Under the pieces are notes generated by a model. That model saw nothing but the letters and a program-made list of their open reading frames with translations, searched no databases and was not told the origin of the DNA. A stretch of 43,698 nt of DNA from Schmidtea nova (lineage: Eukaryota): assembly GCA_044892505.1 (NCBI GenBank), contig CM097882.1:87172001-87215698 (forward strand), given 5' to 3'. Positions within the stretch are counted from its first letter, which is position 1. Each line of letters begins with the position of its first letter. A program made the position numbers and the translations under genes. Positions 1 to 38,147 of this stretch are shown piece by piece.

Positions 1-12
1 TTTCGCCTCTTT

Positions 13-1183
13 TTACACCTCCGTTTCCTCTGGTTCATGGAACCCTTCGTCTTGGAGTTCCATTGGTGGTGGTGGTATAAATGGTAACCACACCACTCTG
101 CTTCTCCACATTGTAATTTCGTCTTGATACGTTCGAGAGATTTGTATCTCCTCATCTAACAGATACTCCATATAGTCTGATTGTTCGCTCAGAGTTTCAA
201 TTTGTCTTTCCATCTCTTCCACTTTTCTCTTCAGGGCTTCTACTTCTGTTGGTTCGGTTTCTACTTCTATGGTTTCTTTCTCTGCTTTCAGGGTTATTAT
301 CTGCTGTTTCAGTTCCTCGTTTTCTTTCGTCAAATTCGTTATGTTCTCCTCGTAAGCTCGGTTTGATTCCGCATGTCTTTCCTTCACAGCTTTCAGTTCC
401 ATTTTTTTTTGGGTCACCACCCCTTGATAACCATTTACATCTCTTTCCAGGCTTTCTTTTTCCCTGATCAACTTTTGTCTTTCCGCTTCCTCTTTTTGTC
501 TAATGCCTCGTATTTCCCCATTTATCATCTGTTTGCCATTGCGTTTTCTTTAGTTCCTTTGCCTGTTCTCGAATAAATCGCTGTCGTTTTCGACTCCATT
601 CTTTGTTTGTCTGTTCTTGTCGCTTTCTCTGTTCCAATTCTTCTTTCAATTCGTCTATCTCTTGATACAATTTCCAATCTTCGCTGTGTGCTGTCCTTCT
701 GATTATCTCTTTGGCTTCTCTATATACTCGTTTCGACTCCATCTTCCAATGTCTCGCTTGAGCCTTGATTGCTAGTATTTTTACCTCCATCTTTTCCTCT
801 TGTTTCTCCCTCTCTTCTCTTCGCATTTTCATCATGTTTTTGTAATGTTCTGCTTGTTTTCTCATCAACTGATAGGTCTCTTCTATCTTCTGTCGACTTC
901 GTGAGTTCGTTCCTTTTAGCTTCTCTATTTGTGCTGTCAGTTGTACTATCTCTTTATTCACTTCCTCGAGTTCTAGTTGATATAACTCCATTCGTCTCTC
1001 GCATTTTAGTTTATCGTAAAAATTGTTTGTCATCACTTCGTGTAATTCTCTGGTTCTTTGTTCTACTTCCACTTTACATCTCTTTTCGATTTCTCTTTCG
1101 ATTTCTCCTTCTATTGCTTCTTGTTCGTTTGACATCTCGTTTCTCGTTTCCTCTTCGATTACATGTCCATTTGCGTTTTCCAT
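13..1183 (-). CDS. Coiled-coil accessory protein of about 390 aa, split by a probable 1-nt frameshift into ORFs 500..1183 and 13..528; ends in ETEV
   Basis: E/K/Q/R-rich heptads in both ORFs, 29-nt overlap. Deleting one G of the GGGG run (516-519) gives continuous ...DDKWEIRGIRQKEE... The stop follows GAA ACG GAG GTG (ETEV). Confidence 0.7.
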
Positions 1184-1272
1184 TCTGCAATTTACAAATT
1201 TACACTGGTTATACTATACGTTTATTGTTGTTGTCAATTTTTACACTTTATTTACAGGGTCGTTCATTCTGA

Positions 1273-2685
1273 CTACTCTAACCATCCTTTCGTTGACTTT
1301 GTGTTCATCACTGTTGTACTTGTTTTCTTTTCGATCTCCAACTCTACGTATAGGTTGTCCTCGTACAACATTTCCCACATTTTTTGGTGTGGTATGAATT
1401 TTGGTTCTCCCGTTGCTAATGAACATTCTGTGGTTGGTCTTTTGTAAGCCTCGTGCTTCCCATCGACTTTGAATATTCTCACAATCGTTTCTCTCGAGTT
1501 TTTCACTCTCATTATCGCCTTTGTCTCTAGTGGCCATTCCAATATGTCGTCGTAACCACCTTTACACAACGCAAAGAATAGTGACACATGCGTTTCCTTT
1601 CCTGATCCATCTCCATTTGGATAAATTCTCATCCGAACTTTGTATCCATTTTTCCACAGATAGAATGGTGGACTTGTTACCGACACTTGACTTCCTGCTT
1701 TTGCTGCTGCGAACTTTTCGTTGAAGTTCTTGATTTTCCATACATATGGTGCAACAGGTAAACTCTCGATATCCTCTGCATCTCGCACCCATATTTGATG
1801 TCGTACATTTACCTCCTTTACTAGCGTCTCTATGACTTTGATTTTCTCCATCATTTTTTCTCTGGTGAGCTCGAATTGCTCTCTCGTTTCCAGTAATAAC
1901 TCCGTCATTATCTTCTGAGATTCAATTTCTTTTCCCATTTTCTGTATGGTTTGTTCCATTCCGTTCAAATTTGCTGTTAACATCTCGGCGTGTTGTACCG
2001 TTTCCGTTTCCAAATGCTCTTTCATCTCTTTGCTCGTTTTCTTTACTACACATCCTTGTTTACTCCATACGCACTTTCTTGGTCTTGATTCGCATTGTTC
2101 CCAATGTTCTCTCAACATCACTTCTTCTCCGGTTCCGCAATTACTTGGACAAATTCCTCTGAATTTTCCACACACTTTCTCTTCTGCTACGTTGAGATGT
2201 TCTGTTTCGATTACTTCTCTCGTCTCTCTTTGTTCGCAGTATTGACACTCTATTATCTCTGCTTTGCACTCGTCCTTGTGATTTTTCGACTGCTTGATGG
2301 TTATCGTCTGTTGGCACTTTTCACATATCGCTTTCTTGTTTTCGCATTTCTCCAGATGTTGTCTTAACTCGATTATTTGTCCTTTCCATTCACATGGTTG
2401 GTTTATACACTCTGTTTTTATCTTCCAGATCTCCTTTTGTATTGCTTTGTCGGGTTTTGTCTCGTTGATCAGTAGTTTATCGTCACACTCTGGGCACTTT
2501 CTTGTCTCACTTTCACTGATTATTTGCAATATACACTTGGTGCACATCCTGCATCCACATTCCGTTTGCCTGGGTTTTAACAGTAGATTTTTACACTTTA
2601 CACACGTCACATTTACTCCCCATTGTCGATTTTCTCTTCTTAGAATCTCGATCGTTTGGTAATCTGCTTCGCTTTCTGCTCTCAT
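1273..2685 (-). CDS. TRAF: TNF receptor-associated factor (TRAF) homolog, 470 aa, intronless: RING, TRAF zinc fingers, coiled coil, MATH/TRAF-C
   Basis: RING CVKC..KPRQTECGCRMCTKC..CPEC; zinc fingers CINQPCEWKG..HLEKC and CVWSKQGC..HLE; MATH VWKIKNF..SPPFYLWKNGYKVRMRIYPNGDGSGKETHVSLFFALCKGGYDDILEWP. Confidence 0.95.
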   Translation of the reverse strand: MRAESEADYQTIEILRRENRQWGVNVTCVKCKNLLLKPRQTECGCRMCTKCILQIISESETRKCPECDDKLLINETKPDKAIQKEIWKIKTECINQPCEWKGQIIELRQHLEKCENKKAICEKCQQTITIKQSKNHKDECKAEIIECQYCEQRETREVIETEHLNVAEEKVCGKFRGICPSNCGTGEEVMLREHWEQCESRPRKCVWSKQGCVVKKTSKEMKEHLETETVQHAEMLTANLNGMEQTIQKMGKEIESQKIMTELLLETREQFELTREKMMEKIKVIETLVKEVNVRHQIWVRDAEDIESLPVAPYVWKIKNFNEKFAAAKAGSQVSVTSPPFYLWKNGYKVRMRIYPNGDGSGKETHVSLFFALCKGGYDDILEWPLETKAIMRVKNSRETIVRIFKVDGKHEAYKRPTTECSLATGEPKFIPHQKMWEMLYEDNLYVELEIEKKTSTTVMNTKSTKGWLE

Positions 2686-2775
2686 TCTACAACAATATTT
2701 ACATCAATTTCCCCATATTTTTGATTTTTTCTGGTTCTTTATTTACACGTATTTACACAATTTTCCGCTTATTCA

Positions 2776-3126
2776 TTATACATCCTCAGTTGAATCTGGC
2801 TCTGGATACACGTCTATCTCATTTACAATCCAGCTCGTCCAACTATCTGGTATCTCTTCCTCTTCATGTCTCGTTAATCGGTCAATTTCCTCTGCTTGCC
2901 AATTGTTTACTTCATTTAATGTTCGATTCTCGTTCTGTAATTCGTTTATCTGTATTTGTTGGATCTCGATTTTGTTCATTGCTTCGAAATTACAGTTATA
3001 ACTCTCGGTTAATAATTGCGTTTTGGCCGTCAACTGGCTCTGTAATTCGTTTATTGTTCTGGCTAGCAGGTCACATTGCACTTTCCATCTTGTCATCATT
3101 GACATCTCTGTGGTTTCTTGATTCAT
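2776..3126 (-). CDS. Small coiled-coil accessory protein (116 aa) with an acidic Trp-containing tail
   Basis: ATG ORF with heptads (LARTINELQSQLTAK; IQINELQNENRTL) and the element's codon bias; tail SWTSWIVNEIDVYPEPDSTEDV. Confidence 0.7.
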   Translation of the reverse strand: MNQETTEMSMMTRWKVQCDLLARTINELQSQLTAKTQLLTESYNCNFEAMNKIEIQQIQINELQNENRTLNEVNNWQAEEIDRLTRHEEEEIPDSWTSWIVNEIDVYPEPDSTEDV

Positions 3127-3249
3127 CGTTTTTCTAGATTATATACATCATTCTCTTTTTTCTGTTTTTATGTTTTATAATATTTATACCCATACGTATA
3201 CGGTTATGCATTGGTTTTTACAATACTATTTACACTCATATTCCGCCCT

Positions 3250-3708
3250 CTATTCAACTATCACTGGTTTTCCTTCGTACAGTTCCTCGTCCTCGATCTG
3301 TACCCATATTTCTTCGTGTTTTGACCGTCTTTTCAGCTCTTCTCGCACTGCTTTTGGTAGTTTAATGTTGTAATTCGTGACCTTTACGTCTGGCCATTTT
3401 ACTGCTATGGTCTTATTTCTCATGCCATATCTCCAACATACTATCATGATCGTTATCAGCGGTATACACGCTATGAATACTCCCATGCTGATTAATCCCA
3501 TTATTGTTTTCCCAATGCTCCTTCTTGGAGTCTCACTTTGGTTTATCATCACGCCATATTGACCTTTCCATTCTGCTTCCCATTGTTCATATTGTTGTTG
3601 TCTCCGTCTGACTTCTTCGATCACTTTCTCTGGTTCCCATTTTTCTTGTCGATTTGGTATTGTTTCTTCCTTCTCGTTTTGTTCTCTCTTCTGACTCAAT
3701 TCTCGGAA
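3250..3708 (-). CDS. TM helix plus cytoplasmic tail, in frame with pol/FN3 directly after the TAA at 3709-3711
   Basis: TAA TTC CGA GAA TTG.. is contiguous with the pol frame; hydrophobic IMGLISMGVFIACIPLITIMIVC followed by basic WRYGMRNK; tail contains EDEELYE. Confidence 0.75.
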   Translation of the reverse strand, partial: FRELSQKREQNEKEETIPNRQEKWEPEKVIEEVRRRQQQYEQWEAEWKGQYGVMINQSETPRRSIGKTIMGLISMGVFIACIPLITIMIVCWRYGMRNKTIAVKWPDVKVTNYNIKLPKAVREELKRRSKHEEIWVQIEDEELYEGKPVIVE

Positions 3709-6700
3709 TTATAACTTTCTGATTCTCCTCGTTATCGTCGTGTTCCTTGGCGTGTAATAGGTTTCGCACCTTTCTTGTGGATTTCCTTGTGTATCCACTT
3801 CTTCAATTGCACACACTTCGTATTCTGCGTTTGTTTTCAACTTCCTCATTTCTACCTCGATTATTTCTCTTTTGTCATTTGATGTCTTTTGACAATTTCG
3901 TGGAGACTTTCCCTCCTTGTTTGGTATTAATTTCCAACAGATTTCTAGGACCTTTTTATGGATCTTCCATATTATCAGAGTTGATGACTCTGGTTCGTTT
4001 TCTATTGTCGTCCTTTCCGTTGTTGCCGGTTGAATTCTCTGACTGTTGGTTGTCGTGGTCCTTCTTGACTTTCTTTTCCTCTGTCGACTTCTTCCCATTT
4101 CGATCGTTCTTGTTCCGTTAATTTGCTCTGGCGTCTTGTATAGTTTACATTCCAAGCTTCTTTGTATTATTTCTCTTATTCTTCGGATTACGCAAATTTC
4201 ATATGCTTGTCCGACTTCGAATCCATTTAGTTGAAACGGAATTCCTCGTTCTCTCGTTCTGCATTGCGGTAGTACGTGACTGGTCGCTACTCCGATGTAT
4301 TTTCTCCAACACATCCCAATTGTTCTTCGACCAATGTTTTTTATCTCCACGGTTACTACTTCATTCTTAATCGTTTCTTGGTCTTGTTTCCTTCTTTTTG
4401 GGAACTCAATTATCTCCTTTGCTTGGAACACTTTACACTCGCTTGTTCCTGGTCTGTTTCCGTTTGCTGCTTTTTCCATGAGACATAGTTCACATGTTTT
4501 CTCTGTTTCTATTTCAGTTATCTCTATTTCTTCATTTGTCTCTGCTTCCCGACTTTCTCTTGTCTCGCTGATTCCAATTACTTCATTGTTTCGTCCCCAA
4601 CATCTTCCATTCGTTGTTCGTTGATCTTGGATGTTTACTAACGTCATCACGCTGATATCTATGTCCTCCATGATTCTCTTAATGAGGATTAATATTAATG
4701 CTACACATATCAATTCTGGTTGGAATGTTAATTTTCCCGCTGGATTTTTGGTTATTCTTTCTTTCTCTGTTCGGTTTCTGATTCCTTCTTCTGCTTCGGT
4801 TTGATTCTTCCCTTTCTCTGATTCCACTTCTGATCTTCTCGTTGTCTCTTCGCTTCTTTTTCCAATCCATTTCTGTATTTTCAGCGCTTCTGTTGCTTTA
4901 TATAATTGACATGCAGTTACTTGAGGTGCTTTTGGTTCTCCTCTCTGCTTTATTGCGCATATTATGTATGACTTTTCTTTCTCTAATCCTTTGATTTGGA
5001 TGACGTCTCGCTTCAAGTCTGACAATATACACTTCAGCGTATCGTTTTTCCTCAGGTTTTCCTTCCAGCATATTCTTTCGTATACTTCGTTTCCTCTGAT
5101 TATTTCCAGCGTGACGTATTGTTTCTTGGCTTCTCCTTGTCCGATGATTGTTATCAATATCGCGATACACAACATTTCTGGTCTCAAAAGTAGACTTCCT
5201 GTTCGTTTTCCATAGTTCGCATGTTCGTCTTTTGTTCCACTGTTTTCTCGTTCTTCTGCTTCTCCTTTCTTGTCGTTTCTCGTTGGCTTCGGTTCTTCTT
5301 GTCTTTCTTTTTCATTATCCTCCGTTCTTTTGTTGTCATTGTCTTCGTTGTTCTCTTCGTTGTTGCTTTTGTCGTCGAAATCTCTGTAACCACCCCCTGG
5401 TCCTTTGAAAATGTCGTCCTCGACATTGATTTCTTCAATCAATCTTTCATACGCTTGAACCGCGAGTGTGCTAGACTCGAATTCACGTATCTCCATATCC
5501 TTGGATGGTTCTATGTTTTCTAGTCTATTTTGCTTGATTGTTTCTTTGGCCTTTGCCCACTCATTCACATATTTTCTGAACAAGTCTTTCCATCTTCCCG
5601 TTCGTTCCTGTTCCTTTGGGTTGTTAGTAAATTTCAAATCTCTTCTCTTCAAGAATTCTTCAACTATCTCTGGCTTTTTGTGTCTTAGCAACGCGCTTCT
5701 GATACACCAATTCTGATTTTGTTCCATATGGTCATTGATCTTGAATGCCGGTTCCTTGGTGATCGGATTCACCCATGTTAGTAATGCTCTTGTTTTTTCT
5801 ACGTCGTGTATCATTACTGTCAGACTGAAATTCTTTACGTTATTTGCCAGGTATTCGATATCATCTTGTTTCTTGATGGACTTTATGAACTTGATCATCT
5901 CGAAGTTGTTCCACTGTATTGCGATATCTATGATGGAATTATTCTTTCCATTTTTCCCTTCGATTTTTGCTCCTGCTTCGTATAATTCACTTAGCACTTT
6001 AAAGTTCGTCTTCTTTCTTGCTGCGATTATCATGATTGTATCTCCGTTATCATCAACCATATTCATATCTGCTTCGCACTTGACCATCGCTTTCGTTATT
6101 TCCAGCACTTCGTTTTCTTTCTTTCGACGTAATGCCCAGTGTATCGGCAATCTCCCATCCTTTGATAATAGGAATGCCACTGGCATTTGATTCTTGATCG
6201 TTTCTATGTCACTCTCGTTATAATCCCCTTGTGCATATCTGTGCACTCTCTCTGTAATTGCTCCTAGTATTCCCAACGAGCTTTTATTCTCCTTGAATTT
6301 CGATAATTTTTCCTGCGCTTTTGCTACGATTGCGTCTAATCTCTCTTGATAATCGGCTTTTGCATTGAACAACACTGCCTTGCTTCTTATTCGTGTTTGC
6401 ATCTGTTTCATCCGTTGGTCTTGATACACTGCTTGTCTGAAGAATTGTCCATACTTCAATGCTTCCACCAGCTCTTTATATCTCTTGCTTATTTCTTTGT
6501 GCTGCTTTTGGATGTCATAGAAATGTTCGAAGCTCATATCCGGATTCCATTGTTTATCACACCATTTCTTGATTAATCCGAATAGTTCCTTCTTTCGGTC
6601 ATCCAACTTGTATTCTCTTGGGTTTTCGCTAACCCGTAGCGTATCTCTCGCTATCAACACTGCAAGTGTTTTTGGATCGTATGTTACCTCTAGTAGATGT

Positions 6701-10875: not shown

Positions 10876-10914
10876 AACCGCTATCGTGTGCGTGTCTTCT
10901 AACGAGTCTACGCT

Positions 10915-13900: not shown

Positions 13901-14001
13901 TTTTCCATTCCAGTTCCGGTTTCTACAAATCTCGTTGCTCTTCCCGTTTCTTCCGTAACATCTCTTCCTTCGTTTGCTCGTTGTTCTAACCATCTTTTCA
14001 T
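10915..14001 (-). CDS. env: AT-hook plus Bcl-2-like domain fused to a chuvirus-G-like class III envelope glycoprotein (1028 aa)
   Basis: Env motifs FEVFDC..C, FYCG, DCILNREILKTKLAVA, GHFGRVVGEAMYVYIC, CTNELEI..QPVTRII, CSNAYGPLY..W, GIYSPKDL..ILFP, TM WGRFLIFGQMMAGILGVILIIQIV. N-terminal KRPRGRPK; BH2-like YILRKGGWEKF. Confidence 0.85.
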   Translation of the reverse strand: MKRWLEQRANEGRDVTEETGRATRFVETGTGMEKRPRGRPKIDPTTAIPKTREERRQEQWEICLKKLDKIAEIRGKEENQVCQGEEWLTKTIMDVLAIIDPELKNLWRINEPSTKAKMLHNAIAPIMPELIKAKTKSNHLDWQGTTRLIKRLLNGAEMDSKYLVAISYTIYNLLTLSRGSPKSSPMGRHIKNTAMIIEKEIEPYILRKGGWEKFIKENQTKEGSNVMRKKLEGVLREMENRQTMQGNGRSTLNLNSIIMMMLVWLLSTEGVTTFEVFDCDQMKLGEKYSLRGTEQCKDASPVELREIKKEQWYHVYQEAELIKTMVNECKVQKTRFAFYCGRGHYSAIVMPGTEREPIVLQGEDCEALFKHGEVTTRDKIKIKGKPGMMLQQTYYVAGRITGGEGYCQGETYPIFGVLATNLVVMDTYIVELKSYEAFFEPTTGEMKTLSMCKIDRSMCQTGMSTLVYKPKVNECQLQLLQGAKFDEIQGKTFQEEDDDDKARAKHLKEALENKRQLKPDHREKRIEMRTTPTVLITTNQDVGMRFIKGKATLKCSTTVYETNYPGIYVSKQEVPNAKPKIDTMDIKLHLYVNNKMDFLFHRGQASLQKVYYDLINNDCILNREILKTKLAVAITNPDSAMPLLPLREGHFGRVVGEAMYVYICEKTHASLAATTQLKPGTCTNELEIDYKGKVRYVQPVTRIINPPGFEPNPFNCSNAYGPLYQKPDGKWVMFPGRTEVLAPREFELMQLSKDRQFSDVDVSNNGIYSPKDLEAARQNILFPARREALLSNIVTITGGTDYREGPNYELLLSPAHFKKATENMMKAMWGRFLIFGQMMAGILGVILIIQIVRVIITQMLACFDIYKREKKVNWKMVVGFLPFLAKTMVLHGHSKNIHRIKRLLKILAKMKGTNEDVGRKFKKIMQDEQARRQLKKERKGLWERVKGYRTQDDSSNDDDDDDDQGGQANINQIPQYTEKSAVENWRYSAPPQSMYNEPIYKAKPNMMQMMPMTSIYPIIPEGCKVKRG
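13360..13800 (-). other. Bcl-2-like domain
   Basis: EPYILRKGGWEKF matches the BH2 pattern; MDSKYLVAISYTIYNL lies about 50 aa upstream and aligns to the BH1/alpha5 pattern (NWGRIVALFYF) with NWGR degenerate; helical composition; C-terminal hydrophobic segment. Confidence 0.65.
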
Positions 14002-14016
14002 TTCTTGAGTAAACTA

Positions 14017-14235
14017 TGGTTGTTCTTGCTCGTCTTCGGAATCGTTTACCATTTCTATGACTACCTCCTGTTCCACTCCTTGATCGTCGATTTCTGCTGG
14101 TGACGTTACTGGCATCTCTATTATTCTGTCGAAAATATTCGCCGTTGGTTTTTGAGTTAACTTCGTTAATTCTTCTATCGCTTCGTCACTGTCTGTTAAT
14201 ATTTCGTCTACGTCATACGCTTCTGGCGGTGTTCT
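14017..14235 (-). other. 73-codon open acidic linker, in frame between ORF2 and the Bcl-2/env ORF, bounded by two TAG codons
   Basis: Manual translation RTPPEAYDVDEILTDSDE...DSEDEQEQP; TAG at 14236-14238 and 14014-14016, then FTQE and ATG 14001, all in one frame. Confidence 0.75.
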
Positions 14236-16474: not shown

Positions 16475-18729
16475 CCGGTTCCACCTCTCTGATGATCATC
16501 ACGTTCATTTTCGTCTCCGTTACTCCCATATCTTCCCATATATCAGTCATCTTCAACTTTACTTCCGGTAAATCCTCTGTTTGTAGGAATGCTTCTCTGG
16601 GTAGTTTCGTCACTCCCGGCATCATCTCATTTACTTTATTGAACAATCTTCCCACTTCTTCTTTTACATTGTATTTGAATCGCCACACGTGATCATTCAG
16701 CATGATCACCAACATTCCTCTTTGTTTGATTCTCACTTCTTCTTCTTGATTCACTTCTTTTTCTGTTTCTTTTTCTATTTCTGTTTCTTTTTCTACTTCT
16801 TCAACTTTTTGATTCTGCTCTGCGGTTTCTACTTCCTGATTCATTTCTTCTTGTTTCTGCTCTTCGTTTCTTTTCTCTTTAACTTCTAACTCGTCTGACT
16901 CATCTTGCTGCTTCTCTTCCATCATTGCTCGCATCATGTTGATCCTTGGGTTTCCCTTTTTTAACAGTTGTAATCGTTGTTGCCTGACTTGTTCTTCTTC
17001 TCGTCGTACTCTGGCCCATTCTTGATTATGTTTCTGTTGGCTTTCTCTATTTTCTCTTTCAGCCTCAGCTTCTATTAACTGGATCATGTTTATCTTTGGT
17101 TGAGCAGCTTGCTGGCTTCCCTTTGCCATGCTTTCGATTATCTCGTGTAATCTGGATACCTCCTGTCTCAACTTGGCCTCTTTCATACTGGCTTCGTTTG
17201 CACTGCTATTTGGGTTGTTCCGTTGTTGACCCTGATTCCCATAACTTGATCGATTTCCGTAATTCTGTCTATTTCCACTGTTTGACCAACTTCTCTGTTG
17301 ATTACACTCTCTTGACATGTGTCCCGTTTTCCCACATGTGTAACACATTTTCCCGTAACATCGATTCTCTGAGTGACCTTTTTGTCCACACAGTTTACAG
17401 GCTACATTCTGAAAACACTCTTGTTGCCAATGTCCGTTTTTCCCACACGTCTGACATTGCCTATTCTGCCTGTCATTGTAACTATTTCCTCCACTCGTGT
17501 TCACTGTGATATATCCATTATTTTTCCTCGCTGGCGGTTCTTTGAACAATCTCTGCGAATGGGGAATACTTTGATTCATGTTTCTTTTTCCTTGTTCTTC
17601 ATCTTCTGTCGTTTTTCCCATTACCGCCGTAATTCTCATGTCGTTCATTGCCATATGCAATTCGAATAGGTTGGCTGCTTCTAACGCTTCATCTACTGTT
17701 TTACATCCTTTGCATCCCACTTGTGCTCTGATGTCAGGTCTCCTGAGACCTCGTACGAATAACGCTGTCATCAATTCTTCGTCTACTGGGCTTCCTCTAT
17801 TGAATGCCAGTTTCGCCAACTTTCTTAATTCGCTTGCGTATACCGCATTTGACTCATTTCTCCTCTGTTTTCTTGCTGAGAACTCATCGAACGCTTCTTT
17901 CAACACTTTATTTATCCCAAACGTCTGTTGGAAGAACTCCTTGATTGCTTCCCACGTTCTGGGTGGATTACTTCCCGATCTCTTTTCAATATACAGATCC
18001 AATGCGCTATCTTTCAAGTATAGCGGGATTCGATTTGCCAACGTTTCTGCACTTTATCCGCATATATCCACGAATATGCCAAATTCCTTTAGAAACGTGT
18101 CCAATCTACTGGCGTCTCCATCGAATGGTTCGCCCTTGAATTTTTCTCTCAGATCCTCTCTGTGTTCACTCATCCCGATTCCACTGTCTTGGAATACTGT
18201 ACTAGTTTTCTTTGCTTCTATTTCACCACTTGTTTCTGGATTCAACTCTTCTTCTTCAATACTCTCTGTTTCGTTATCTCTTGATTCGCTTCTTGTTCTG
18301 TTTTCACTAACTAGTTCACAGTCTATCGTTTCTACTTCGTTTCGTACTTCTGGATCCTCTGGGGTTTCTTCTTGGTTCTCTTTATTACTCGAATTATCGC
18401 TGATCTCTGCTGGTTTGTTCTTCAGTTGCGCTGCTTTATTTCTTGGCCTTGTCTTCTTCGCTGTTTTTCTTTCTTCTTCTGTTAGGATTGGTATTATACC
18501 TGTCCTTGTTTTGCGTTCCGCAATCTTGTCTATTACTCAACTTCTTATATTCTCAACTGATTTTCTACTTCGCTTTTGCTTTGCTTCTTCTTCGATTTGT
18601 TTCCTTTGACTGCTCTGACTGCTAGATTGCCTGGAATTGCTTGATTGATTTGTTTCCTTAAAACAAATAATCACTTACACGATACGTCCCCGTTATCGTG
18701 TTTCTCGTCCCTCTCACGGGTGTAGTCAT
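16440..18729 (-). pseudogene. gag: gag (capsid plus three CCHC knuckles), disrupted in this copy by TGA 18537-18539, TAA 18054-18056 and a 14-nt duplication
   Basis: GEPFDGDASRLDTFLKEF..ICG*SAE..IPLYLKDSALDLY..TWEAIKEFFQQTF..RKQRRNES..YASELRKLA; CQTCGKNGHWQQEC, CKLCGQKGHSENRC, CYTCGKTGHMSREC. The frame is continuous across both stops up to 18656. Confidence 0.9.
18657..18678 (-). promoter_or_regulatory. Consensus splice donor GTAAGT (18678) and in-frame acceptor (18657): putative 22-nt intron or major splice donor
   Basis: Minus strand ATG(18729)-MTTPVRGTRNTITGTYR|GTAAGTGATTATTTGTTTTAAG|GAA ACA (ETNQ..) joins in phase 0 with gag. Confidence 0.5.
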
Positions 18730-19050
18730 AATTCATGAATCTCCCCATTTTTCCCATTTCCCTTGATTTTAAGTCTATTTAAATTATCTATGCAGTCGTA
18801 TCAATTATCTATTCTTTATCAAATACACCAATTACTTTTCCCCAGTTTCCCAATTACTTTGTCGCTCGGCGCTCTTATTATCCCCTTTACTTTTCTCAGG
18901 CTTCTCTGGCTCTGAGTTCAAATTTCCCCTTATCTGTCGACTACTCTGTTTCTCGACTATTCGCTTTATTTCCTATTCACACTACGTTTACTACTTCATT
19001 TCAATTCTCGTCTCTACTCACCTTTAATTCAACTGACATCTCTCGTTGGC

Positions 19051-19427
19051 CTGCTGGGCTTTCCAGTCAGCGCTTTTAATCTCACCTTTTACTGTTATTT
19101 CGTTACTCTCGACCACGACTGTCATTTCATTAGCCTGCTGGGTTTTCCAGTCAGCGCTTTTATTATCCTCCATTTACCTCTTTACTGTCGACTTTTACCT
19201 GCTCTTTACTCCGATGATCATCACTTTTGACCTGCTGGGTCTTCCAGTCAGCGTCCTCAATTTCACCACTTTATTATTACTCACTTTTGTTCTCTCGATC
19301 TTTCCTGATCGTTATCATTGACCTGCTGGGTTTTCCAGCTAGCGTCTTTACCACTTTACTTGTCTTAACAAACCGGTTTTATTTTACTTTCGTCGAATCT
19401 CATGGTCTGCTGGGTTTTCCAGTCAGC
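19051..19427. repeat. Five dispersed 21-nt motifs CTGCTGGGYYTTCCAGTCAGC (hairpin-forming, kB-like core) in the leader
   Basis: Copies start at 19051, 19135, 19232, 19323 and 19407 (spacing 84-97 nt). Confidence 0.9.
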
Positions 19428-19766
19428 ACCCTTCACTTACTCGCTTTATTTTATTACTCTTCACTGTATGCATACTTTGAAGTCATTAGGCTACATAATC
19501 AGCTTTACTCGCATTTATCTATACCCAGGTGCGCACCTTTAACTCTTTCGTTATTAATTCGGTTTCAACCCTTATTCCTCATTACTCGCTATTCATTTTC
19601 CCTATTCGTCATTTATCCTCATTATCACTTCTCTACCCTCCTTTATTCCTCTCTATTATTGCTCGTTTATTTCTACTATCCGGATAGTTTTATACTTTGT
19701 TTAGTCCTCATCTGCCTCACTTCGTCGTCTTTCTCGTGGGCTTTTACTCAATATTTTATTTCGGAC

Positions 19767-20290
19767 GAGAACTATGCTCACAGCTGAGAACTATGCTCAC
19801 TAACGAGAACTATGCTCACTAACGAGAATTATGCTCGCTGGCAAAACATGGTTGTTACGAGGGTTTTGCTTACTGATGGAAACTCTGTTTGCTCCGGGGA
19901 CTAGTTCCCCGATGAGAACTATGCTCACTGATGGTGACTACAGGAATTATGCTTCCTGATGAGAACTACGCTCACTACGATGACTATGTTTATTGATGAG
20001 AACTACGCTCACTGATGAGGACTATGTTCGCTGTTAGAACTTACGTTTATTGATGAGAACTCTGCTCACTACGAGATTTATGTTTACGGACGAGAACTAT
20101 GCTCACTATGGTGTTGTGTTTTATGACGAGACCTACGCTCACTATGATGTTATGTTTATGACGAGATCTATGCTCACTGTGATGTGAGGTTTTATGACGA
20201 GACCTATGCTCACTAGGATGTTATTTTTATGACGAGACCTATGCTCACTTTGATGTTAGGTTTTATATCGAGACCTATGCTCACGAACGA
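19767..20290. repeat. Tandem array of about 15 GAGAACTATGCTCACT-type motifs (19-nt, then about 36-nt period)
   Basis: Read directly; variants GAGACCTA(T/C)GCTCACT dominate the right half. Confidence 0.92.
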
Positions 20291-20663
20291 GAACTCGAAA
20301 TATCATCTCTCAGTGGTTGCATGTGTTGCTTCGAGATGTTCCTCTCAGTGGTCACTTATGCTTCTTCGGAGAATCTATTGTCGCGTTTCGTTAAGTTCTG
20401 TCTTTCAAGAACTATGGGCAAATCCTTTCTCTCTAGGACCCCTTTCATCATTTCCTTTCTTTCAAGGATTTCATTTAACCTCGAGTTTTCACTTTACTCG
20501 GTTCATCTATTACACCCCTTTATTCTGTTATCTATTCATCGACTTCTCTACTTGATTTTACTTTATGCGAGCTGATTACGTGCCTTTCCTCATATACTAC
20601 ATTTCCCTATTCGCCTTACTCATTTCATTGCTTTCGGTCTTTACTGATCAGTTTATCCTCCTA

Positions 20664-20671
20664 TTTTTATA
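20664..20671 (-). promoter_or_regulatory. Candidate TATA box (TATAAAAA) for the gag-direction transcript
   Basis: Minus strand GGCGCGCGCAGAAAAACTATAAAAATAGG, upstream of the leader repeats; position plausible only. Confidence 0.3.
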
Positions 20672-20979
20672 GTTTTTCTGCGCGCGCCTAAACTTCATTG
20701 GGTTGTCCCTACCTTTCACCCCAACCAAAATATATAAAAAGATCGCATTGGTCCACTGATGCACGATGTGGTGATCAGTCACATCACAAGAGCTTTCCAA
20801 TATCCGCGATTGGATCCCTTTCTACACATCTCGGGTGAGTTGATCAGTTGGTTCCCCCCAATGGGTGCTTAACGGACTACTCGTAAGTAGCTCATAATTA
20901 CTTAGGTCATTTTTACCAAGTCATTGTTAAACCCTCATAATTTCAATAACAACTGCACTTGTTCAAAACTTTATTTCTA

Positions 20980-21438
20980 TTACAAGTACACTGTTACTTT
21001 CTCGGATACGGGAAAATTGCACATAGGACATCGTTCATTTATTTTACAGTCATTACAGAATCGAAAATGCCCACACGGCAGCAACATTATCTGTATCTTA
21101 TTTATTTCACAGATGTAACACGTCAGATACTGTCTCGTATATTCGGTTGTCGTTCTTATCCACTCATCGTGTTTTGTTGCAATCTGTCGTTCTAGCCTGT
21201 GGCATTCGATATTCATTTCAGGGTTGTTTAATCTTTCTCTGTACCATTTGTATCTCGTTGCTGTATCAACTGTATTCTTATTCTCGCTTATGCTCATCAT
21301 CATTTCGGCTCTTTCTGTGTTGTTTGTCGGTTCGTGATATCTTCCTACCTCGAGTCGTTTTAACTTTCTCATTATTATCTCCATTGTCTCGTTGTTTGTT
21401 TCAAAAAACGTTTGCATTTCTTTTATTTTGTTCTCCAT
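20980..21438 (-). CDS. C-terminal IAP/Mdm2-type C3HC4 RING protein (152 aa, no BIR); putative E3 ligase
   Basis: CYICEINKIQIMLLPCGHFRFCNDCKINERCPMCNFPVSEKVTVYL at the extreme C-terminus; same A-rich codon bias as the element. Confidence 0.85.
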   Translation of the reverse strand: MENKIKEMQTFFETNNETMEIIMRKLKRLEVGRYHEPTNNTERAEMMMSISENKNTVDTATRYKWYRERLNNPEMNIECHRLERQIATKHDEWIRTTTEYTRQYLTCYICEINKIQIMLLPCGHFRFCNDCKINERCPMCNFPVSEKVTVYL

Positions 21439-22370
21439 CCCCTGAATGAATTACCATTAATTTCTGTCGATTTTTATTTATTATCTATTATTTTTATTCT
21501 GTGGTAGCCCTACTGTTCGCTTTCTGTTGTTCTGTTTCGCGTCACTACTTGCGTATCCCCCCGTGTTCTTGAATGTCGCCCCGACATGATCATTGTTAGT
21601 TGCTCACACTCATACCATTTTCATACACACTTTTCAGCATACTTTTACTTTACGTCATGCATATTTTTCATCACTTTTCATACTGTTATTCCACATACTA
21701 TTCATCATACTTCATTCATCCTCATATTTTCACATTCGTACTTTCATTCCCATGCATACTTTTATCATGCTCATCAATCTCATTATTTTACACTCATACT
21801 TTTATTTATTATTTTTCAACCCGATTCATTCTTGCTTCAGGACCCACAAACCCTCTGTTATCATTTACTTTACTTTTCCTCGCTAAATTCAATTTCATCC
21901 CGGTTCAGGCGCTCTAACACTGTCCGCAGATATCGAATTCACTTTTCCCACAAAAATCGATTTAATCCCGGCTGAGCCCCCAAATTTATGCTGGTGTGTT
22001 GGTTTGATGGACAACTGAGATCATTAAGATTTTATATGTTAGGGTGATCTCGCCAACATAAAAACATTCCCCCGCTGACACCCATGATGTATCCCTAACT
22101 ACTCATCATGTTGGTGCTGTGTCAACGTTGTGAAATGACAAGGCAGGTGAGCAACCTTGCGGCTACTATTCCCTTGTTTATTCACGGGTCCACCACTACC
22201 GATAGAAGGTGTTTGTGGATTTCTTTCGGTCCCACTTATGCTCTTTCCTTTTGTCCTAGGGTGATTTAATTTTTAGCGCATCTGCAGCTTTAAATGAACC
22301 AGGTTTTCCTTATGTTTAATTCTCATACATACTTCAAACACCCAAGACAAGTCATTCATCCAATATACAT

Positions 22371-22934
22371 TTATTTATGACTTAACAACACTGAAGGTCT
22401 AATCACATTTAGGAGTTCTTGTTCAGAGAGCCCACTGAGCAGATCCATCTCTATGCCCAGGCGATCAGCATATGCCCGTCGCTCTCTCCGATTTTTCGCT
22501 CCAAGGCGATTCCTTCGCTTTGTCCGTTTTGAGCCTTCTGGATTTCTCGTTGTCGACTCGATGGTCGTGGTTGCGACTTCATCGGTTTCTGTTTGGGTAC
22601 TCGTAGTTACCGATACCGAATCCGCCCATCGGTTAAAGGTACTCGCCCTGATCACTGGGCGTAATTGCTCTGAGATGAATTCTTGAGTCGACACTCTCAA
22701 GTAATTAGATAGCTCCAATTTCAAGGCTGCGACCTCTCGAGCCTGATCGTTGGCTACTTGTTCGGCTCTGTATCTGGCTTGCAGGATGGCTTTAACTCTT
22801 TCGGGATTAAACAATGTTATCTTGATCCTTTGATGTTCGTCGTTCAACTGTCGTAAACGACTTTCCAGGACTCGGGACCGTGCCTTAGGTTCCTTTGCCT
22901 CTTGCTTGTAATTTCGTTTTGGATTCTCGTCCAT
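22371..22934 (-). CDS. Unknown accessory protein: coiled coil, Thr-rich linker, Arg-rich motif, Leu-rich tail
   Basis: Open frame; probable start at ATG 22934 after the acceptor CTAAT..TTTCCCAG|AC; KRTKRRNRLGAKNRRERR. Confidence 0.6.
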   Translation of the reverse strand: MDENPKRNYKQEAKEPKARSRVLESRLRQLNDEHQRIKITLFNPERVKAILQARYRAEQVANDQAREVAALKLELSNYLRVSTQEFISEQLRPVIRASTFNRWADSVSVTTSTQTETDEVATTTIESTTRNPEGSKRTKRRNRLGAKNRRERRAYADRLGIEMDLLSGLSEQELLNVIRPSVLLSHK

Positions 22935-23164
22935 GTCTGGGAAATGTATCATTAATTAGGGTATGCATGATTTGTTTGGTTTCTTAGTCACCATTTTATT
23001 GTCAAACAACTACACTCTATCCTCACTCATTCACATGCATTCAAAAACCAAAACAAAACCCTTTTGAATGGATACATATATTTTAATTTACAACAGATGT
23101 TCTTTCTTTGGAGAGGTCACTCTCGCGATCAATTGTATGGTCGTAACTTCTGATCGGCAGGGTT

Positions 23165-23764
23165 CTAGTCTCGGCGAATTCCTGTTTCATGATATAGTTC
23201 GGGCGCTGGATTCCAACTCAGTTTGTTTTGATAGATGAACACCTCCCAGAGGCGAAGATCTTTGGGCTCGGGGTGTTGATCCACTGAGACGCTTCCTGGA
23301 GCGTTTGGGTAGACGAAGACTTCCCCAGTGTCACTACACCGAGGCCTGTCTAGCAGCAAATACCCGAGTTGGCAGAATGCCTGCCCAGTCATCATTCCGG
23401 TACTCAGTAACCAGCGGGGTTGCTGTACTTCATCTACGAATTGGTAGAACCATCTATCGGATCCTCCTTTGGTAGAACTCGGGGAAAGCGTCCAATCGAC
23501 ATCGCCTTCCCACCTCAACTGTAGCTGGAATGCACAGGCGGGAATACTGGCCGCTGTACTCATATGGGTCCTTGTCCATCGACGCAGGTGTCTACGTGCG
23601 GAGTTGAAAATTTGGCGTGGAGCCTCCTTCTCTCCTTTGATTTCGGAAGTTATTTTTGGTAGGATGACGGAGCGGATGCGCCGTTTCCTCCGGAGAATAT
23701 ACTCCTCTAATTTGACGGGTAGGGGGTCTACCGGCTCCTTCATAGAATGTTCCGTTTTTATCAT
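23165..23764 (-). CDS. Unknown protein (199 aa), visibly higher GC than the rest of the element
   Basis: ATG ORF preceded by CATTTCTTTCAG|AGTGCC; no family recognised. Confidence 0.5.
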   Translation of the reverse strand: MIKTEHSMKEPVDPLPVKLEEYILRRKRRIRSVILPKITSEIKGEKEAPRQIFNSARRHLRRWTRTHMSTAASIPACAFQLQLRWEGDVDWTLSPSSTKGGSDRWFYQFVDEVQQPRWLLSTGMMTGQAFCQLGYLLLDRPRCSDTGEVFVYPNAPGSVSVDQHPEPKDLRLWEVFIYQNKLSWNPAPELYHETGIRRD

Positions 23765-24871
23765 GGCACTCTGAAAGAAATGTCCAGGTTAACCGACAGA
23801 GTCTATCATTGATCATCGATATTTATATCGATCAACCTACTTGGCTTATTCGCTCTATATGCCGTAGGCCTCAGTAGCTCATACACAGATTATTAGACCA
23901 GTGGTCACGATATTCATGTAGGTTGTAGTTGATGTTTTGCTTTGGTGAGTTAATTCACTCCGCAATTTCGGCGGTTTTAACTACACTCATTTCACATTGG
24001 TATTTACAATAATATATTTTATTCAATTTCTCATCGATCGTTTTCATTCATCCAACACAGTTCGTTTACCGAACATCATCAGCAACTATCAAGGTTCATG
24101 TCACGGTGGGGAAGATTAGTAATCCCTTAGTCAAACCGCTTTGTCAAGAAACGTATTAAATTTCTTTTCCTACTATCGGGATTGACTTTTCATACCCTCC
24201 GAGGGTTATATGCATAGGTTAGAAACATATTCGATTTACTACTACTTCTTGATGCTAGTGTCCTTTGTCCGCGACGTTACGCTTTACATATCCCTACTCT
24301 CGTCGACTTTCAATGTATCAGCAATCTTTGGAGGTACACACCCTCATCAAGATACCCCCATACATATATACTCCATGCGAAATTAACTTTACCTTGATTT
24401 GATTTATGATCCTTCACGGTTACTCGATACCCTATGTGCACTTATTCCCCTTCCGCTTACCAAGTATTTAGTAAACCTATGGTCCCGCCGCATCAGCACC
24501 TCACATAAACATGTGTTGCACTGAGAGGCCCAAGAATCCGTCAGGCTGTTAGGCCTCCGGAAAACCTTATTGATTTTAGCATGATTATGAGTTATGAGGG
24601 TTTAAATTCTCTAAGAACAAAACAAAATTCAATAATACCTTTATTTCGTTCCAATTGGTTTCACACAGTTACAAGTTGTAAGTCGTGACTTAAAGTTCAC
24701 ACTCGGTAAAAATGACATTACCAATACTGATTTACCTTCAGTATTTATACTAAACCGGTGTTGTTGGTTAGCCAATCAGCATCGAGTATGTGTGTCTGTT
24801 TGTTCATTATTTTGTGTTGCCGGCTTTTTGGTGCCTAACTCAACTCAATGATTTGTTTGTTTAATCATGCG

Positions 24872-25119: not shown

Positions 25120-25159
25120 ATGCTGCTCGATTTGGCTGGCCCAACAAGAATATATAAAA

Positions 25160-37605: not shown

Positions 37606-37669
<64 letters not shown>

Positions 37670-38116: not shown

Positions 38117-38147
<31 letters not shown>

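What the first reader, a model, noticed from the sequence alone, without database searches (positions are those of the whole stretch)
1..23800. Giant enveloped Gypsy element carrying a TNF/NF-kB-ubiquitin-apoptosis toolkit
One co-oriented retroelement of at least 21 kb encodes gag, env and pol. It also encodes a full TRAF, a Bcl-2-like domain, an IAP-type RING, two ankyrin clusters, ubiquitin-like domains and a receptor-like FN3-TM protein (all seen). TRAF, IAP-RING, Bcl-2 and IkB-type ankyrins are established components of TNFR/NF-kB/cell-death control, and such cargo is typical of large DNA viruses. Inference: this is an infectious complex-retrovirus-like lineage that manipulates host innate immunity and apoptosis. 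I know of no described LTR element with this set but could not search.
Basis: partly seen in the sequence, partly recalled or inferred. Interest (0 to 1): 0.96.

Follow-up and report, generated by a model that had tools for sequence, protein, structure and literature searches.

The report
Giant Burro-like endogenous retrovirus copy
This is a real retrovirus-like mobile element of at least 25 kb that carries its own envelope gene plus captured host signalling genes (a full TRAF adaptor, an IAP-type RING, ankyrin repeats), but this kind of element, with this gene set, has already been described in planarian flatworms as Burro.

Summary
The core observation holds. On the minus strand, from base 1 to about 25.1 kb, lies one compositionally uniform, A-rich coding block. 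It holds gag (three CCHC knuckles), a class III mononegavirus-type fusion glycoprotein placed between gag and pol, and a Ty3/Gypsy PR-RT-RNaseH-IN with two ankyrin modules in the same reading frame. A full TRAF (RING, TRAF zinc fingers, MATH) lies downstream, and an ORF with an IAP-type RING lies upstream. No tool could confirm the Bcl-2-like, ubiquitin-like or FN3 domains. Only weak hints exist, in the slots where Burro elements carry such domains.

The TRAF block has the base and codon composition of the retroelement, not of the AT-rich flank or its host exon, so it is cargo and not a neighbouring host gene. Burro/GYPSM1 elements of Schmidtea are published as giant Gypsy elements with in-frame env, MATH_TRAF_C, RING, BIR, ankyrin, SUMO-like and BCL2-like motifs, and the same "meddling with apoptosis and ubiquitination" idea was proposed for them.

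This copy lacks BIR and dUTPase and carries TRAF as a separate ORF. It has a few interruptions and is cut off by the window edge, with no LTR pair visible. Verdict: a new member of a known kind, of moderate to low interest.

The parts
1..25150 (-). Visible part of the giant retroelement. It is cut by the left edge of the window. The 5' limit is approximate and is set by composition only.
   Evidence: GC is about 0.40 and the minus strand is strongly A-rich, and both end near 25.1-25.2 kb. No LTR pair lies inside the window.
16440..18176 (-). gag: a capsid-like N-terminal part, three CCHC zinc knuckles and a Glu/Gln-rich tail. Broken by 1 in-frame stop.
   Evidence: Pfam zf-CCHC at 7e-10. Three knuckles at 17304-17456. 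29% identity to the gag part of relative L001. Stop count.
3709..16542 (-). Long polyprotein reading frame holding the X region, the Bcl-2 slot, Env, PR-RT-RH-IN, the ankyrin modules and the beta-rich modules. It is in a different frame from gag and overlaps it by about 100 nt. It is interrupted by 3 in-frame stops.
   Evidence: 3 stops in 4277 codons, against 401 and 180 in the other frames. Relatives encode gag-env-pol as single ORFs of up to 4057 aa. No canonical slippery heptamer in the overlap.
14662..16467 (-). X region between gag and env. It is homologous to P0126, which carries a MATH/TRAF-C domain inserted at a point where this copy has none.
   Evidence: An exhaustive HMMER search gave one hit, P0126, at 6e-56. 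BLASTP gave 31% identity over 535 aa plus a second block. P0126 has a MATH domain at residues 613-754.
15172..15411 (-). Candidate ubiquitin-like (beta-grasp) segment, unverified.
   Evidence: A beta-beta-alpha-beta-beta pattern in a low-confidence AF2 model. Pfam and Foldseek were blank. Relative P0041 has a sub-threshold PF00240 ubiquitin hit in the same slot.
13279..13836 (-). Slot where Burro elements carry a BCL2-like motif. Here only a BH2-like Gly-Gly-Trp motif was found, so it is unverified.
   Evidence: Motif scan. Pfam and PDB searches were blank. The position matches PMC6431247.
11401..13272 (-). Env: a signal-peptide-like segment, a class III-type fusion glycoprotein ectodomain and a TM segment (11434-11490). 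A cytoplasmic tail of about 170 aa follows.
   Evidence: PF24664 Monjiviricetes_fusion at 4.8e-73 and 2.6e-20. TM and signal-like segments. 35-37% identity to the env of L001-L004.
7963..10845 (-). Ty3/Gypsy pol core: PR 10573-10845, RT 9433-9909, RNase H 8857-9246, IN 7963-8532.
   Evidence: Pfam RVP, RVT_1, RT_RNaseH, Integrase_H2C2 and rve. Catalytic motifs present. 44-49% identity to metagenomic gag-env-pol elements.
6871..7182 (-). Ankyrin module 1, in the pol frame, followed by a helical region.
   Evidence: Pfam Ank_2 at 8.5e-11. The best PDB hits are ankyrin-1/2 and DARPins, with Bcl-3 far down the list.
5881..6159 (-). Ankyrin module 2, a diverged duplicate of module 1.
   Evidence: Pfam Ank_2 at 1.2e-8. 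PDB hits are generic ankyrins. The parallel layout is seen in the translation.
3712..5163 (-). C-terminal end of the pol frame: an acidic linker, then three beta-rich Cys-containing modules, two of them preceded by hydrophobic segments.
   Evidence: Translation and hydrophobic segments. AF2 pLDDT 34.6 with beta-strand clusters. Pfam and Foldseek were blank.
3250..3699 (-). Small ORF with one strong TM segment.
   Evidence: ORF list and hydropathy. No Pfam family.
2776..3126 (-). Small ORF of coiled-coil type.
   Evidence: ORF list. Only weak coiled-coil Pfam hits.
1273..2685 (-). Full-length TRAF accessory gene: RING 2485-2604, TRAF zinc fingers 1987-2178, a coiled-coil region, and MATH/TRAF-C 1333-1746.
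   Evidence: Pfam MATH_2 at 1e-26, zf-TRAF and TRAF3_RING. PDB TRAF2/1/5/3 and TRAF6 RING-ZnF. Alignment with TRAF2 and TRAF4. Codon usage r = 0.88 to the element core.
500..1183 (-). Glu/Lys-rich ORF with no recognised domain.
   Evidence: Codon usage r = 0.81 to the core.
13..528 (-). Coiled-coil ORF next to the window edge.
   Evidence: Weak coiled-coil Pfam hits (MAD, Wtap and others).
18537..20982 (-). Non-coding stretch upstream of gag. It holds 36/71-nt tandem repeats (19765-20301) and about six dispersed copies of a motif of about 22 nt (19034-19465). It is a leader or part of a long LTR.
   Evidence: No ORF of 70 aa or more on the minus strand.
20980..21438 (-). Upstream accessory ORF (152 aa) ending in an IAP-type RING (21004-21126). 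It has no BIR domain.
   Evidence: Pfam zf-C3HC4_3 at 6.8e-9. Best PDB hits are cIAP2 at 7.9e-7, then cIAP1, XIAP and livin RINGs.
22371..23764 (-). Two further upstream ORFs (193 and 199 aa) in a GC-richer stretch. They have no recognisable domains and may not be genes.
   Evidence: Their codon usage is less core-like (r = 0.64 and 0.44).

Best explanation
The region is one copy of a Burro-type giant Ty3/Gypsy endogenous retrovirus. Its 3' end is cut off by the window edge. Elements of this kind are described from planarian flatworms. It sits in an AT-rich animal genome next to a BICRA/GLTSCR1-like host exon.

Shown:
- gag with three CCHC knuckles.
- A very long reading frame holding an accessory region, a mononegavirus-type class III fusion glycoprotein with its own signal-like and TM segments, PR-RT-RNaseH-IN with intact catalytic motifs, two ankyrin modules and three small beta-rich modules.
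- Downstream ORFs that include a full TRAF.
- An upstream ORF with an IAP-type RING.

Inferred:
- It replicates like an LTR retrovirus.
- Env, made from its internal start and signal peptide (by splicing or by protease processing), would let particles pass between cells.
- The TRAF, RING and ankyrin parts are host-derived adaptor and E3 modules kept in the element because they act on the host's TRAF-dependent signalling, ubiquitination and cell-death decisions in cells that express the element.

This particular copy carries a small number of interruptions: 1 stop in gag, 1 frame change between gag and the long frame, and 3 stops in the long frame. It is therefore more likely a recently decayed copy than an autonomous one.
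For: - Domain calls.
- One compositional block. The strand-specific 3-mer correlation of bases 1-3700 (the TRAF block) is 0.97 to the core and 0.38 to the flank. Codon usage r to the core is 0.88 for TRAF and 0.94 for the ankyrin extension, against 0.26-0.49 for flank and host ORFs.
- The long frame is almost stop-free, with 3 stops in 4277 codons.
- The ankyrin modules are in the same frame as pol.
- Relatives with 44-49% pol identity and 35-37% env identity have the same gag-env-pol order, often as one ORF of up to 4057 aa. Several carry ankyrin modules, and one has a sub-threshold ubiquitin match in the gag-env slot.
- The only relative of the X region, out of 1.84 billion representatives, carries a MATH/TRAF-C domain inside it. 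That is the layout published for Burro ORF1.
- Literature: Burro/GYPSM1 elements have an internal region of up to 25 kb, Gag with three CCHC, MATH_TRAF_C, a Ubi2/SUMO-like motif, BCL2, in-frame env with mononegavirus hits, PR, RT, IN, RING, BIR, ankyrin and accessory ORFs (PMC6431247).
- The planarian genome is more than 70% A/T and holds Burro elements of more than 30 kb (PMC11410931).
- BURRO1 is expressed and PIWI-controlled (PMC8532177).
Against: - No LTR pair, PBS or PPT could be identified, so the limits of the element are not shown.
- No Burro sequence was available for direct comparison, and the host species is not identified.
- BIR and dUTPase, both listed for Burro1, are absent by Pfam.
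- The MATH domain is not in the polyprotein but in a separate ORF.
- The Bcl-2-like, UBL and FN3-like assignments failed every test run.
- P0126 is only 31-33% identical and its source is unnamed.
- The block upstream of gag (RING ORF and two further ORFs) is compositionally less core-like.
- Any effect on host immunity is inference only.
Confidence: 0.8

Rival explanations
1. A member of a distinct, so far undescribed lineage of giant gag-env-pol Gypsy elements. It would not be Burro1-4, might not sit in a planarian host, and would have acquired a full TRAF and an IAP-type RING independently.
For: - No close relative of TRAF, env N-terminus or any accessory ORF was found in the searches run.
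- The best pol identity is 49% and the X-region relative is 31-33% identical.
- BIR and dUTPase are absent.
- The TRAF is a separate full-length ORF downstream of pol, unlike the published Burro1 layout.
Against: - The word-based searches are limited by length, so Burro ORF1 polyproteins of 4873-5140 aa fall outside the length windows used.
- The same slots, the same domain set and three CCHC knuckles are present as in Burro.
- The AT-rich flank fits a planarian.
- The literature already notes that accessory ORFs and polyprotein subdomains interchange between Burro-like elements.
Confidence: 0.15
2. A composite locus. The block upstream of gag (RING ORF, two further ORFs and the repeats, 18.5-25.1 kb) is not internal to this copy. 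It would be a very long LTR, or the 3' accessory end of a neighbouring or tandem copy that shares an LTR.
For: - 2.4 kb of non-coding tandem and dispersed repeats separate the RING ORF from gag.
- The composition of 21-25 kb is less core-like: r = 0.68-0.80, with GC up to 0.54.
- Codon usage r is 0.44-0.69.
- No PBS was located.
Against: - The orientation is the same and A-richness continues to about 25.1 kb.
- No internal direct repeat suggests an LTR junction.
- Upstream accessory ORFs are reported for a Burro-like element of Dugesia tigrina.
Confidence: 0.2
3. An ordinary env-bearing Gypsy element that happens to lie next to host TRAF and RING genes, or an assembly chimera.
For: The element's ends are not visible in the window. 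TRAF families are large in many invertebrates (general knowledge).
Against: - The TRAF block shares the retroelement's strand-specific composition and codon usage, not that of the flank or of the host exon.
- The ORFs are intronless, co-oriented and tightly packed, and they lie in the same frame as the polyprotein.
- The ankyrin modules sit inside the pol frame itself.
- The same domain set is published for Burro.
- There is no compositional break between pol and TRAF.
Confidence: 0.05

Closest known systems
Burro1-4 / GYPSM1 giant Gypsy-like LTR retrotransposons of Schmidtea mediterranea, and Burro-like elements of Dugesia (Jurka 2007; Grohme et al. 2018; Arkhipova & Yushenova 2019, PMC6431247)
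   Same: - Giant size, with an internal region above 20 kb.
- Gag with three CCHC knuckles.
- env of mononegavirus fusion-glycoprotein type, placed in frame between gag and pol.
- MATH/TRAF-C, RING and ankyrin domains, plus accessory ORFs.
- Tandem repeats.
- An AT-rich host genome.
- An X-region relative (P0126) with an embedded MATH domain.
   Different: - No BIR and no dUTPase were detected.
- The MATH domain is part of a complete TRAF encoded by a separate ORF downstream of pol.
- The RING is in a small upstream ORF.
- The Ubi2/SUMO-like and BCL2-like motifs were not detectable here.
- No direct sequence comparison was possible, so identity to a named Burro family is untested.
GAG-ENV-POL 'ancient errantiviruses' with gB-type/class III Env in Nematoda, Bryozoa and Platyhelminthes (Chary & Hayashi 2026, PMC13524379; Sacco et al. 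2022)
   Same: Ty3/Gypsy pol, env located between gag and pol, and a class III-type fusogen of RNA-virus origin.
   Different: That survey does not mention TRAF, ankyrin or other cargo. This copy carries about 14 kb of extra coding sequence.
Unnamed metagenomic gag-env-pol elements (L001-L005; P0033, P0039, P0041, P0058, P0100 and others)
   Same: Pol is 44-49% identical and env 35-37% identical. PF24664 env lies upstream of pol. They have giant single ORFs of up to 4057 aa, ankyrin modules, extra ORFs after pol, and a possible size of about 23 kb (L001).
   Different: They have no TRAF, no RING ORF and no X-region similarity. Their ankyrin module can sit before PR. Some have a second aspartic protease domain.
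Mosquito BEL/Pao and arthropod Gypsy elements with chuvirus-like glycoprotein (Dezordi et al. 2020, as cited in PMC13524379)
   Same: Capture of a chuvirus/mononegavirus-type class III glycoprotein by an LTR retroelement.
   Different: They are described as BEL/Pao or ordinary Gypsy elements, and no host-signalling cargo is mentioned for them.
Host-derived immune and apoptosis modulators of large DNA viruses (baculovirus IAPs, poxvirus ankyrin and Bcl-2-like proteins; general knowledge)
   Same: Functional analogy: a virus-carried RING E3, ankyrin adaptors and signalling mimics.
   Different: These are DNA viruses with no retroelement backbone. Function here is untested.

Membership tests
Ty3/Gypsy (Metaviridae) LTR retroelement | pol domain order PR-RT-RNaseH-IN with intact catalytic motifs | tested here: met
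   Pfam domains in that order. DTG, YIDD, HHCC and DD35E present. Nearest proteins are Gypsy pols.
Ty3/Gypsy (Metaviridae) LTR retroelement | Two long terminal repeats, PBS, PPT and target-site duplication | tested here: inconclusive
   No long direct repeat within 1-25 kb and no tRNA or PBS clue. The element runs off the left edge, so the 3' LTR cannot be in the window.
GAG-ENV-POL errantivirus-like elements | env ORF between gag and pol that encodes a class III-type viral fusogen | tested here: met
   PF24664 at 4.8e-73, located between gag and PR, with signal-like and TM segments. The fold itself was not tested, and no PDB sequence hit was found.
Burro (giant planarian Gypsy) | Internal region far above 10 kb (up to 25 kb) | tested here: met
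   At least 18.5 kb from gag to the window edge, and about 25 kb of element-like composition.
Burro (giant planarian Gypsy) | Gag with retrotrans_gag-like part and three CCHC knuckles at the N-terminus | tested here: met
   Three CCHC knuckles. The capsid-like part is 29% identical to a relative's gag. The Pfam retrotrans_gag family itself was not hit.
Burro (giant planarian Gypsy) | env in frame with pol inside one huge polyprotein | tested here: met
   Env and pol share one frame with 3 stops in 4277 codons. gag is in another frame in this copy.
Burro (giant planarian Gypsy) | MATH_TRAF_C domain | tested here: met
   MATH_2 at 1e-26. Here it is part of a separate full-length TRAF ORF downstream of pol, not between gag and env. 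The homologous X region of P0126 has the MATH in the Burro position.
Burro (giant planarian Gypsy) | Ankyrin repeats and a RING motif | tested here: met
   Ank_2 twice in the pol frame. RINGs in the TRAF and in the upstream ORF.
Burro (giant planarian Gypsy) | BIR domain | tested here: not met
   No BIR hit in any ORF at a Pfam E-value of up to 1-10.
Burro (giant planarian Gypsy) | dUTPase between PR and RT | tested here: not met
   The PR-RT linker of 226 aa was scanned at E up to 10 and gave no PF00692 hit.
Burro (giant planarian Gypsy) | Ubi2/SUMO-like and BCL2-like motifs between the MATH slot and env | tested here: inconclusive
   Pfam and PDB searches were blank. The only hints are a BH2-like motif and a low-confidence beta-grasp-like pattern. 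Foldseek was not significant.
Burro (giant planarian Gypsy) | Sequence relationship to Burro1-4/GYPSM1 and a planarian host | not testable with these tools
   No Burro or planarian sequence could be fetched. The flank GC of 0.21-0.31 is compatible with a planarian genome of more than 70% A/T.
TRAF family | N-terminal RING, TRAF zinc fingers, coiled coil and C-terminal MATH/TRAF-C | tested here: met
   The protein is 24-30% identical to TRAF2 and TRAF4. The RING histidine position holds a cysteine.
IAP family | At least one BIR domain (the RING is optional) | tested here: not met
   Only the C-terminal RING resembles those of cIAP and XIAP, and there is no BIR. The ORF is a protein with an IAP-type RING, not an IAP.
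IkB family | Ankyrin domain specifically related to IkB/Bcl-3 | tested here: not met
   The best matches are ankyrin-1/2 and designed ankyrins. Bcl-3 appears only at 2.8e-10, far down the list, for one of the two modules.
Bcl-2 family | BH1-BH3 motifs, a helical bundle and usually a C-terminal TM segment | tested here: inconclusive
   No PF00452 hit and no PDB hit. Only one BH2-like tripeptide motif was found. No structure model was available for this segment.

The most novel reading that the evidence does not exclude
The element belongs to an uncatalogued lineage of giant enveloped Gypsy retroviruses. This lineage would have captured a complete TRAF adaptor and an IAP-type RING as free-standing accessory genes, independently of Burro1. 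That would make capture of host TNFR/TRAF-pathway parts a recurrent strategy of invertebrate retroviruses rather than a quirk of one family.
Probability: 0.2. Interest if true: 0.6.

Novelty: new member of a known kind. Interest (0 to 1): 0.3.

Why it matters
Burro-type elements are the largest known LTR retroelements. They are the only ones reported to carry a set of apoptosis and ubiquitin-signalling domains together with an RNA-virus fusogen.

This copy adds three details:
- The TRAF part can be a complete RING-ZnF-coiled-coil-MATH protein encoded by its own ORF.
- Ankyrin modules recur across distant gag-env-pol relatives.
- Cargo is shuffled between polyprotein subdomains and separate ORFs.

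It does not open a new category. Its value lies in comparative annotation of how retroviruses pick up host signalling genes, and in warning annotators that such TRAF, RING and ankyrin ORFs are not host genes.

Tried and rejected
Searches that found nothing:
- A whole-length env word search was blank because the words came from the non-conserved first 500 aa.
- Exact look-ups of window ORFs in public assemblies and in the protein collection found none on record.
- Scans of viral and metagenome contigs with env, with TRAF and with the X-region alignment gave no relatives.
- P0126 has no contig on record and no name.
- The Grohme 2018 paper and the BURRO1 primer table are not held, so no direct check against Burro sequences was possible.

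Domain tests that failed:
- Pfam at relaxed thresholds on short pieces for Bcl-2, UBL, FN3 and dUTPase gave nothing.
- PDB sequence searches of the X region, the Bcl-2 slot and the Env ectodomain gave nothing.
- The AF2 models of the pol C-terminus (pLDDT 34.6) and of the X region (pLDDT 40.4) were too poor, and their Foldseek hits were not significant.
- BLASTP self-comparison did not detect the internal duplications seen by eye.
- phmmer of the accessory regions against the 125 pol relatives gave nothing.
- Rfam and tRNA scans were empty.

Ideas considered and rejected:
- A variant genetic code. All three stop codons are excluded from 2400-codon runs.
- Programmed -1 frameshifting at the gag junction. 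No canonical slippery heptamer was found, although this is not excluded.
- Cordylochernes hits as closest relatives. They are multi-copy chimeric gene models at 36% identity.

Full report
**Anatomy**

The window has no N. From base 1 to about 25.1 kb the minus strand is one compositional block with GC near 0.40 and strong A-richness. The rest of the window has GC of 0.21-0.31 and no such skew.

Reading the minus strand from 5' to 3', the block contains the following:
- About 1.3 kb of non-coding sequence.
- Two ORFs without recognisable domains.
- A 152-aa ORF ending in a RING.
- 2.4 kb of non-coding sequence with 36/71-nt tandem repeats and about six copies of a 22-nt motif.
- gag.
- A very long reading frame with an accessory 'X' region, Env, PR-RT-RNaseH-IN, two ankyrin modules and three small beta-rich modules.
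- A small TM ORF, a coiled-coil ORF, a full TRAF ORF and two Glu/Lys-rich or coiled-coil ORFs that reach the window edge.

No pair of long direct repeats lies in the block, so no LTR pair is visible and the 3' end lies outside the window.

Confirmed:
- gag has three CCHC knuckles.
- Env is PF24664 Monjiviricetes_fusion at 4.8e-73. A second stretch covers the start of the profile. A signal-like hydrophobic segment lies just upstream, and one TM segment and a tail of about 170 aa lie downstream.
- The pol is Gypsy-type, with DTG, YIDD, HHCC and DD35E present.
- Two ankyrin modules lie in the pol frame.
- The TRAF has a RING, TRAF zinc fingers and MATH. Its best solved relatives are the TRAF2/1/5/3 TRAF-C domains (1e-26) and the TRAF6 RING-zinc-finger region (7e-13).
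- The upstream RING is closest to the RINGs of cIAP2, cIAP1, XIAP and livin (8e-7). It has no BIR, so the ORF is not an IAP.

Not specifically supported: the ankyrins match ankyrin-1/2 and designed ankyrins best. Bcl-3 appears only far down one list, so 'IkB-type' is not supported.

Not confirmed:
- Bcl-2-like domain. Only a BH2-like Gly-Gly-Trp motif was found, in the 240 aa before the Env signal peptide.
- Ubiquitin-like domains. By eye, and as a beta-beta-alpha-beta-beta pattern in a model of pLDDT 40, but with no Pfam, PDB or Foldseek support.
- FN3-TM. The beta-rich Cys modules and hydrophobic segments are visible, but the model has pLDDT 34.6 and there are no significant matches.

The gene order is gag-env-pol, not gag-pol-env.

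**Is the cargo inside the element?**

The ends are not visible, so this rests on internal evidence.
- The 3' block with the TRAF (bases 1-3700) has a strand-specific trinucleotide profile that correlates 0.97 with the gag-env-pol core and 0.38 with the flank.
- Codon usage of the TRAF correlates 0.88 with the core, compared with 0.83 for gag and 0.94 for the ankyrin extension. A host exon and other flank ORFs give 0.26-0.49.
- The ORFs are intronless, co-oriented and tightly packed.
- The ankyrin and beta-rich modules are in the pol reading frame itself.
- The long frame has 3 stops in 4277 codons, against 401 and 180 in the other two frames. The same frame stays unusually open through the TRAF block, with 11 stops in 812 codons against 80 and 32.

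The block upstream of gag is less clear: r = 0.68-0.80, with GC up to 0.54.

**Relatives**

A search with the first 1000 aa of pol gave, as closest by identity (43-49%), unnamed proteins from metagenome assemblies. Many are single ORFs of 2700-4057 aa that combine CCHC, PF24664 env and PR-RT-RH-IN, and some also carry ankyrin repeats.

Five of their contigs were read. They share env (35-37%) and pol (44-45%) with the window, but not the X region, the TRAF or the RING.
- In P0041 the ankyrin module sits before PR, and a sub-threshold ubiquitin (PF00240) match lies between gag and env.
- L001 has extra ORFs after pol, a weak SUMO-like match in one of them, and a weak 250-nt repeat pair 23.4 kb apart.

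An exhaustive HMMER search with the X region found one protein among 1.84 billion. This is P0126 (UniParc, unnamed), 31% identical over 535 aa. It carries a MATH/TRAF-C domain inserted where the window has none. That MATH is 32% identical to the MATH of the window's TRAF.

**What is already known**

Arkhipova and Yushenova (2019, PMC6431247) summarise the Burro elements of Schmidtea mediterranea (Grohme et al. 2018; GYPSM1 of Jurka 2007).
- They are present in thousands of copies, with an internal region of up to 25 kb and a total above 30 kb.
- A 4873-aa ORF1 holds Gag with three CCHC, MATH_TRAF_C, a Ubi2/SUMO-like motif, BCL2-like, env in frame between gag and pol with hits to mononegavirus fusion glycoproteins, PR, dUTPase, RT and IN, plus RING (AIR1), Smc, BIR and ankyrin motifs.
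[quoted passage not shown] In Dugesia tigrina the MATH is in an upstream accessory ORF.
- The authors already suggested that Burro meddles with apoptosis and ubiquitination.

Planarian genomes are more than 70% A/T (PMC11410931), which matches the flank here. BURRO1 is expressed in the intestine and controlled by SMEDWI-2 (PMC8532177). GAG-ENV-POL Gypsy elements with class III Env are also reported from Nematoda, Bryozoa and Platyhelminthes (PMC13524379).

**State of this copy (counts only)**

- gag: 1 in-frame stop in 578 codons.
- gag and the long frame are in different frames with an overlap of about 100 nt and no canonical slippery heptamer. This is one frame change, and it may be a mutation or an unusual signal.
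- Long frame: 3 in-frame stops.
- The catalytic motifs are intact.

Relatives and Burro encode these parts as one ORF, so I read this copy as lightly decayed.

**Mechanism**

Shown: the coding capacity for a retrovirus-like particle (Gag, PR, RT, RNase H, IN), for a membrane fusogen with its own signal and anchor, and for host-type adaptor and E3 modules.

Inferred:
- LTR-retrovirus replication.
- Env expression from its internal start by splicing or processing.
- Action of the TRAF, the IAP-type RING and the ankyrin modules on TRAF-dependent signalling, ubiquitination and cell death in expressing cells.

**Rivals**

- A distinct undescribed lineage (0.15).
- The upstream block belongs to a long LTR or a neighbouring copy (0.2; this is compatible with the main reading for the rest of the element).
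- Adjacent host genes or an assembly chimera (0.05).

The consensus lines printed by the alignment tool were not used. None of the fetched contigs looked human.

There were two slips.
1. The script joined three DNA segments of the element in memory to obtain one codon-count vector. Nothing was printed or saved. I repeated the statistic by adding per-segment counts, and I cite only that.
2. Their places can therefore be inferred from those records. After noticing this I reported counts only.

Noticed in passing
window 31133-31426 (-): An ORF with a clear GLTSCR1/BICRA conserved-region match (PF15249, 2.3e-12). It is probably an exon of a host chromatin-remodelling gene on the same strand. The Gln/Asn-rich ORFs at 29280-29804 and 39950-40213 may be further exons, in which case the element sits in or just after this gene.
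   Followed up: partly
window 25200-27400: A 2.2-kb stretch directly next to the element has the opposite strand skew (A-rich on the plus strand, GC 0.32), no ORF of 70 aa or more, and no similarity to retroelement proteins. Its origin is unknown.
   Followed up: partly
window 29872-30584: A tandem array of about 29 copies of a 24-25-nt AT-rich unit (higher-order periods of 49 and 73 nt), 91-93% matches.
   Followed up: no
window 32452-33470: A 135-aa ORF (32863-33270, -) is bracketed by 56-77-nt inverted repeats and 28-29-nt tandem repeats. By eye the layout suggests a small remnant of a terminal-inverted-repeat DNA transposon. Pfam found no family.
   Followed up: partly
window 37590-39090 and 40223-40860: An (AT)n tract is flanked by a perfect 45-nt inverted repeat (37639-37683 / 38103-38147). 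There is also a 76-nt-arm palindrome (38588-38763), a duplication of about 630 nt (38140-38460 / 38776-39086) and repeats with a period of about 280 nt (40223-40860).
   Followed up: no
window 19034-19465 (-): About six copies of a conserved motif of about 22 nt, spaced 84-181 nt apart in the non-coding stretch upstream of gag, next to the 36/71-nt tandem repeats at 19765-20301. They could be binding or packaging sites. This was not tested.
   Followed up: no
L001 ORF2 residues 1772-1860; P0100 residues 822-909; P0039 residues 1822-1910 and 2209-2304: Several metagenomic relatives carry a second aspartic-protease domain in addition to the retroviral PR (PF13975 gag-asp_proteas strongest, PF09668 also hit). 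In L001 it follows the ankyrin module after IN.
   Followed up: no
L003 17000-24600: A metagenome contig with a related gag-env-pol element continues into bacterial-type genes (Bac_luciferase, NAD_binding, MnhB; contig GC 0.455). This is either a chimeric assembly or an insertion next to horizontally acquired genes.
   Followed up: no
window 1987-2604 (TRAF RING): In the alignment with TRAF2 and TRAF4, the zinc-binding histidine position of the TRAF RING holds a cysteine. The RING is therefore of an all-Cys type at that position.
   Followed up: partly
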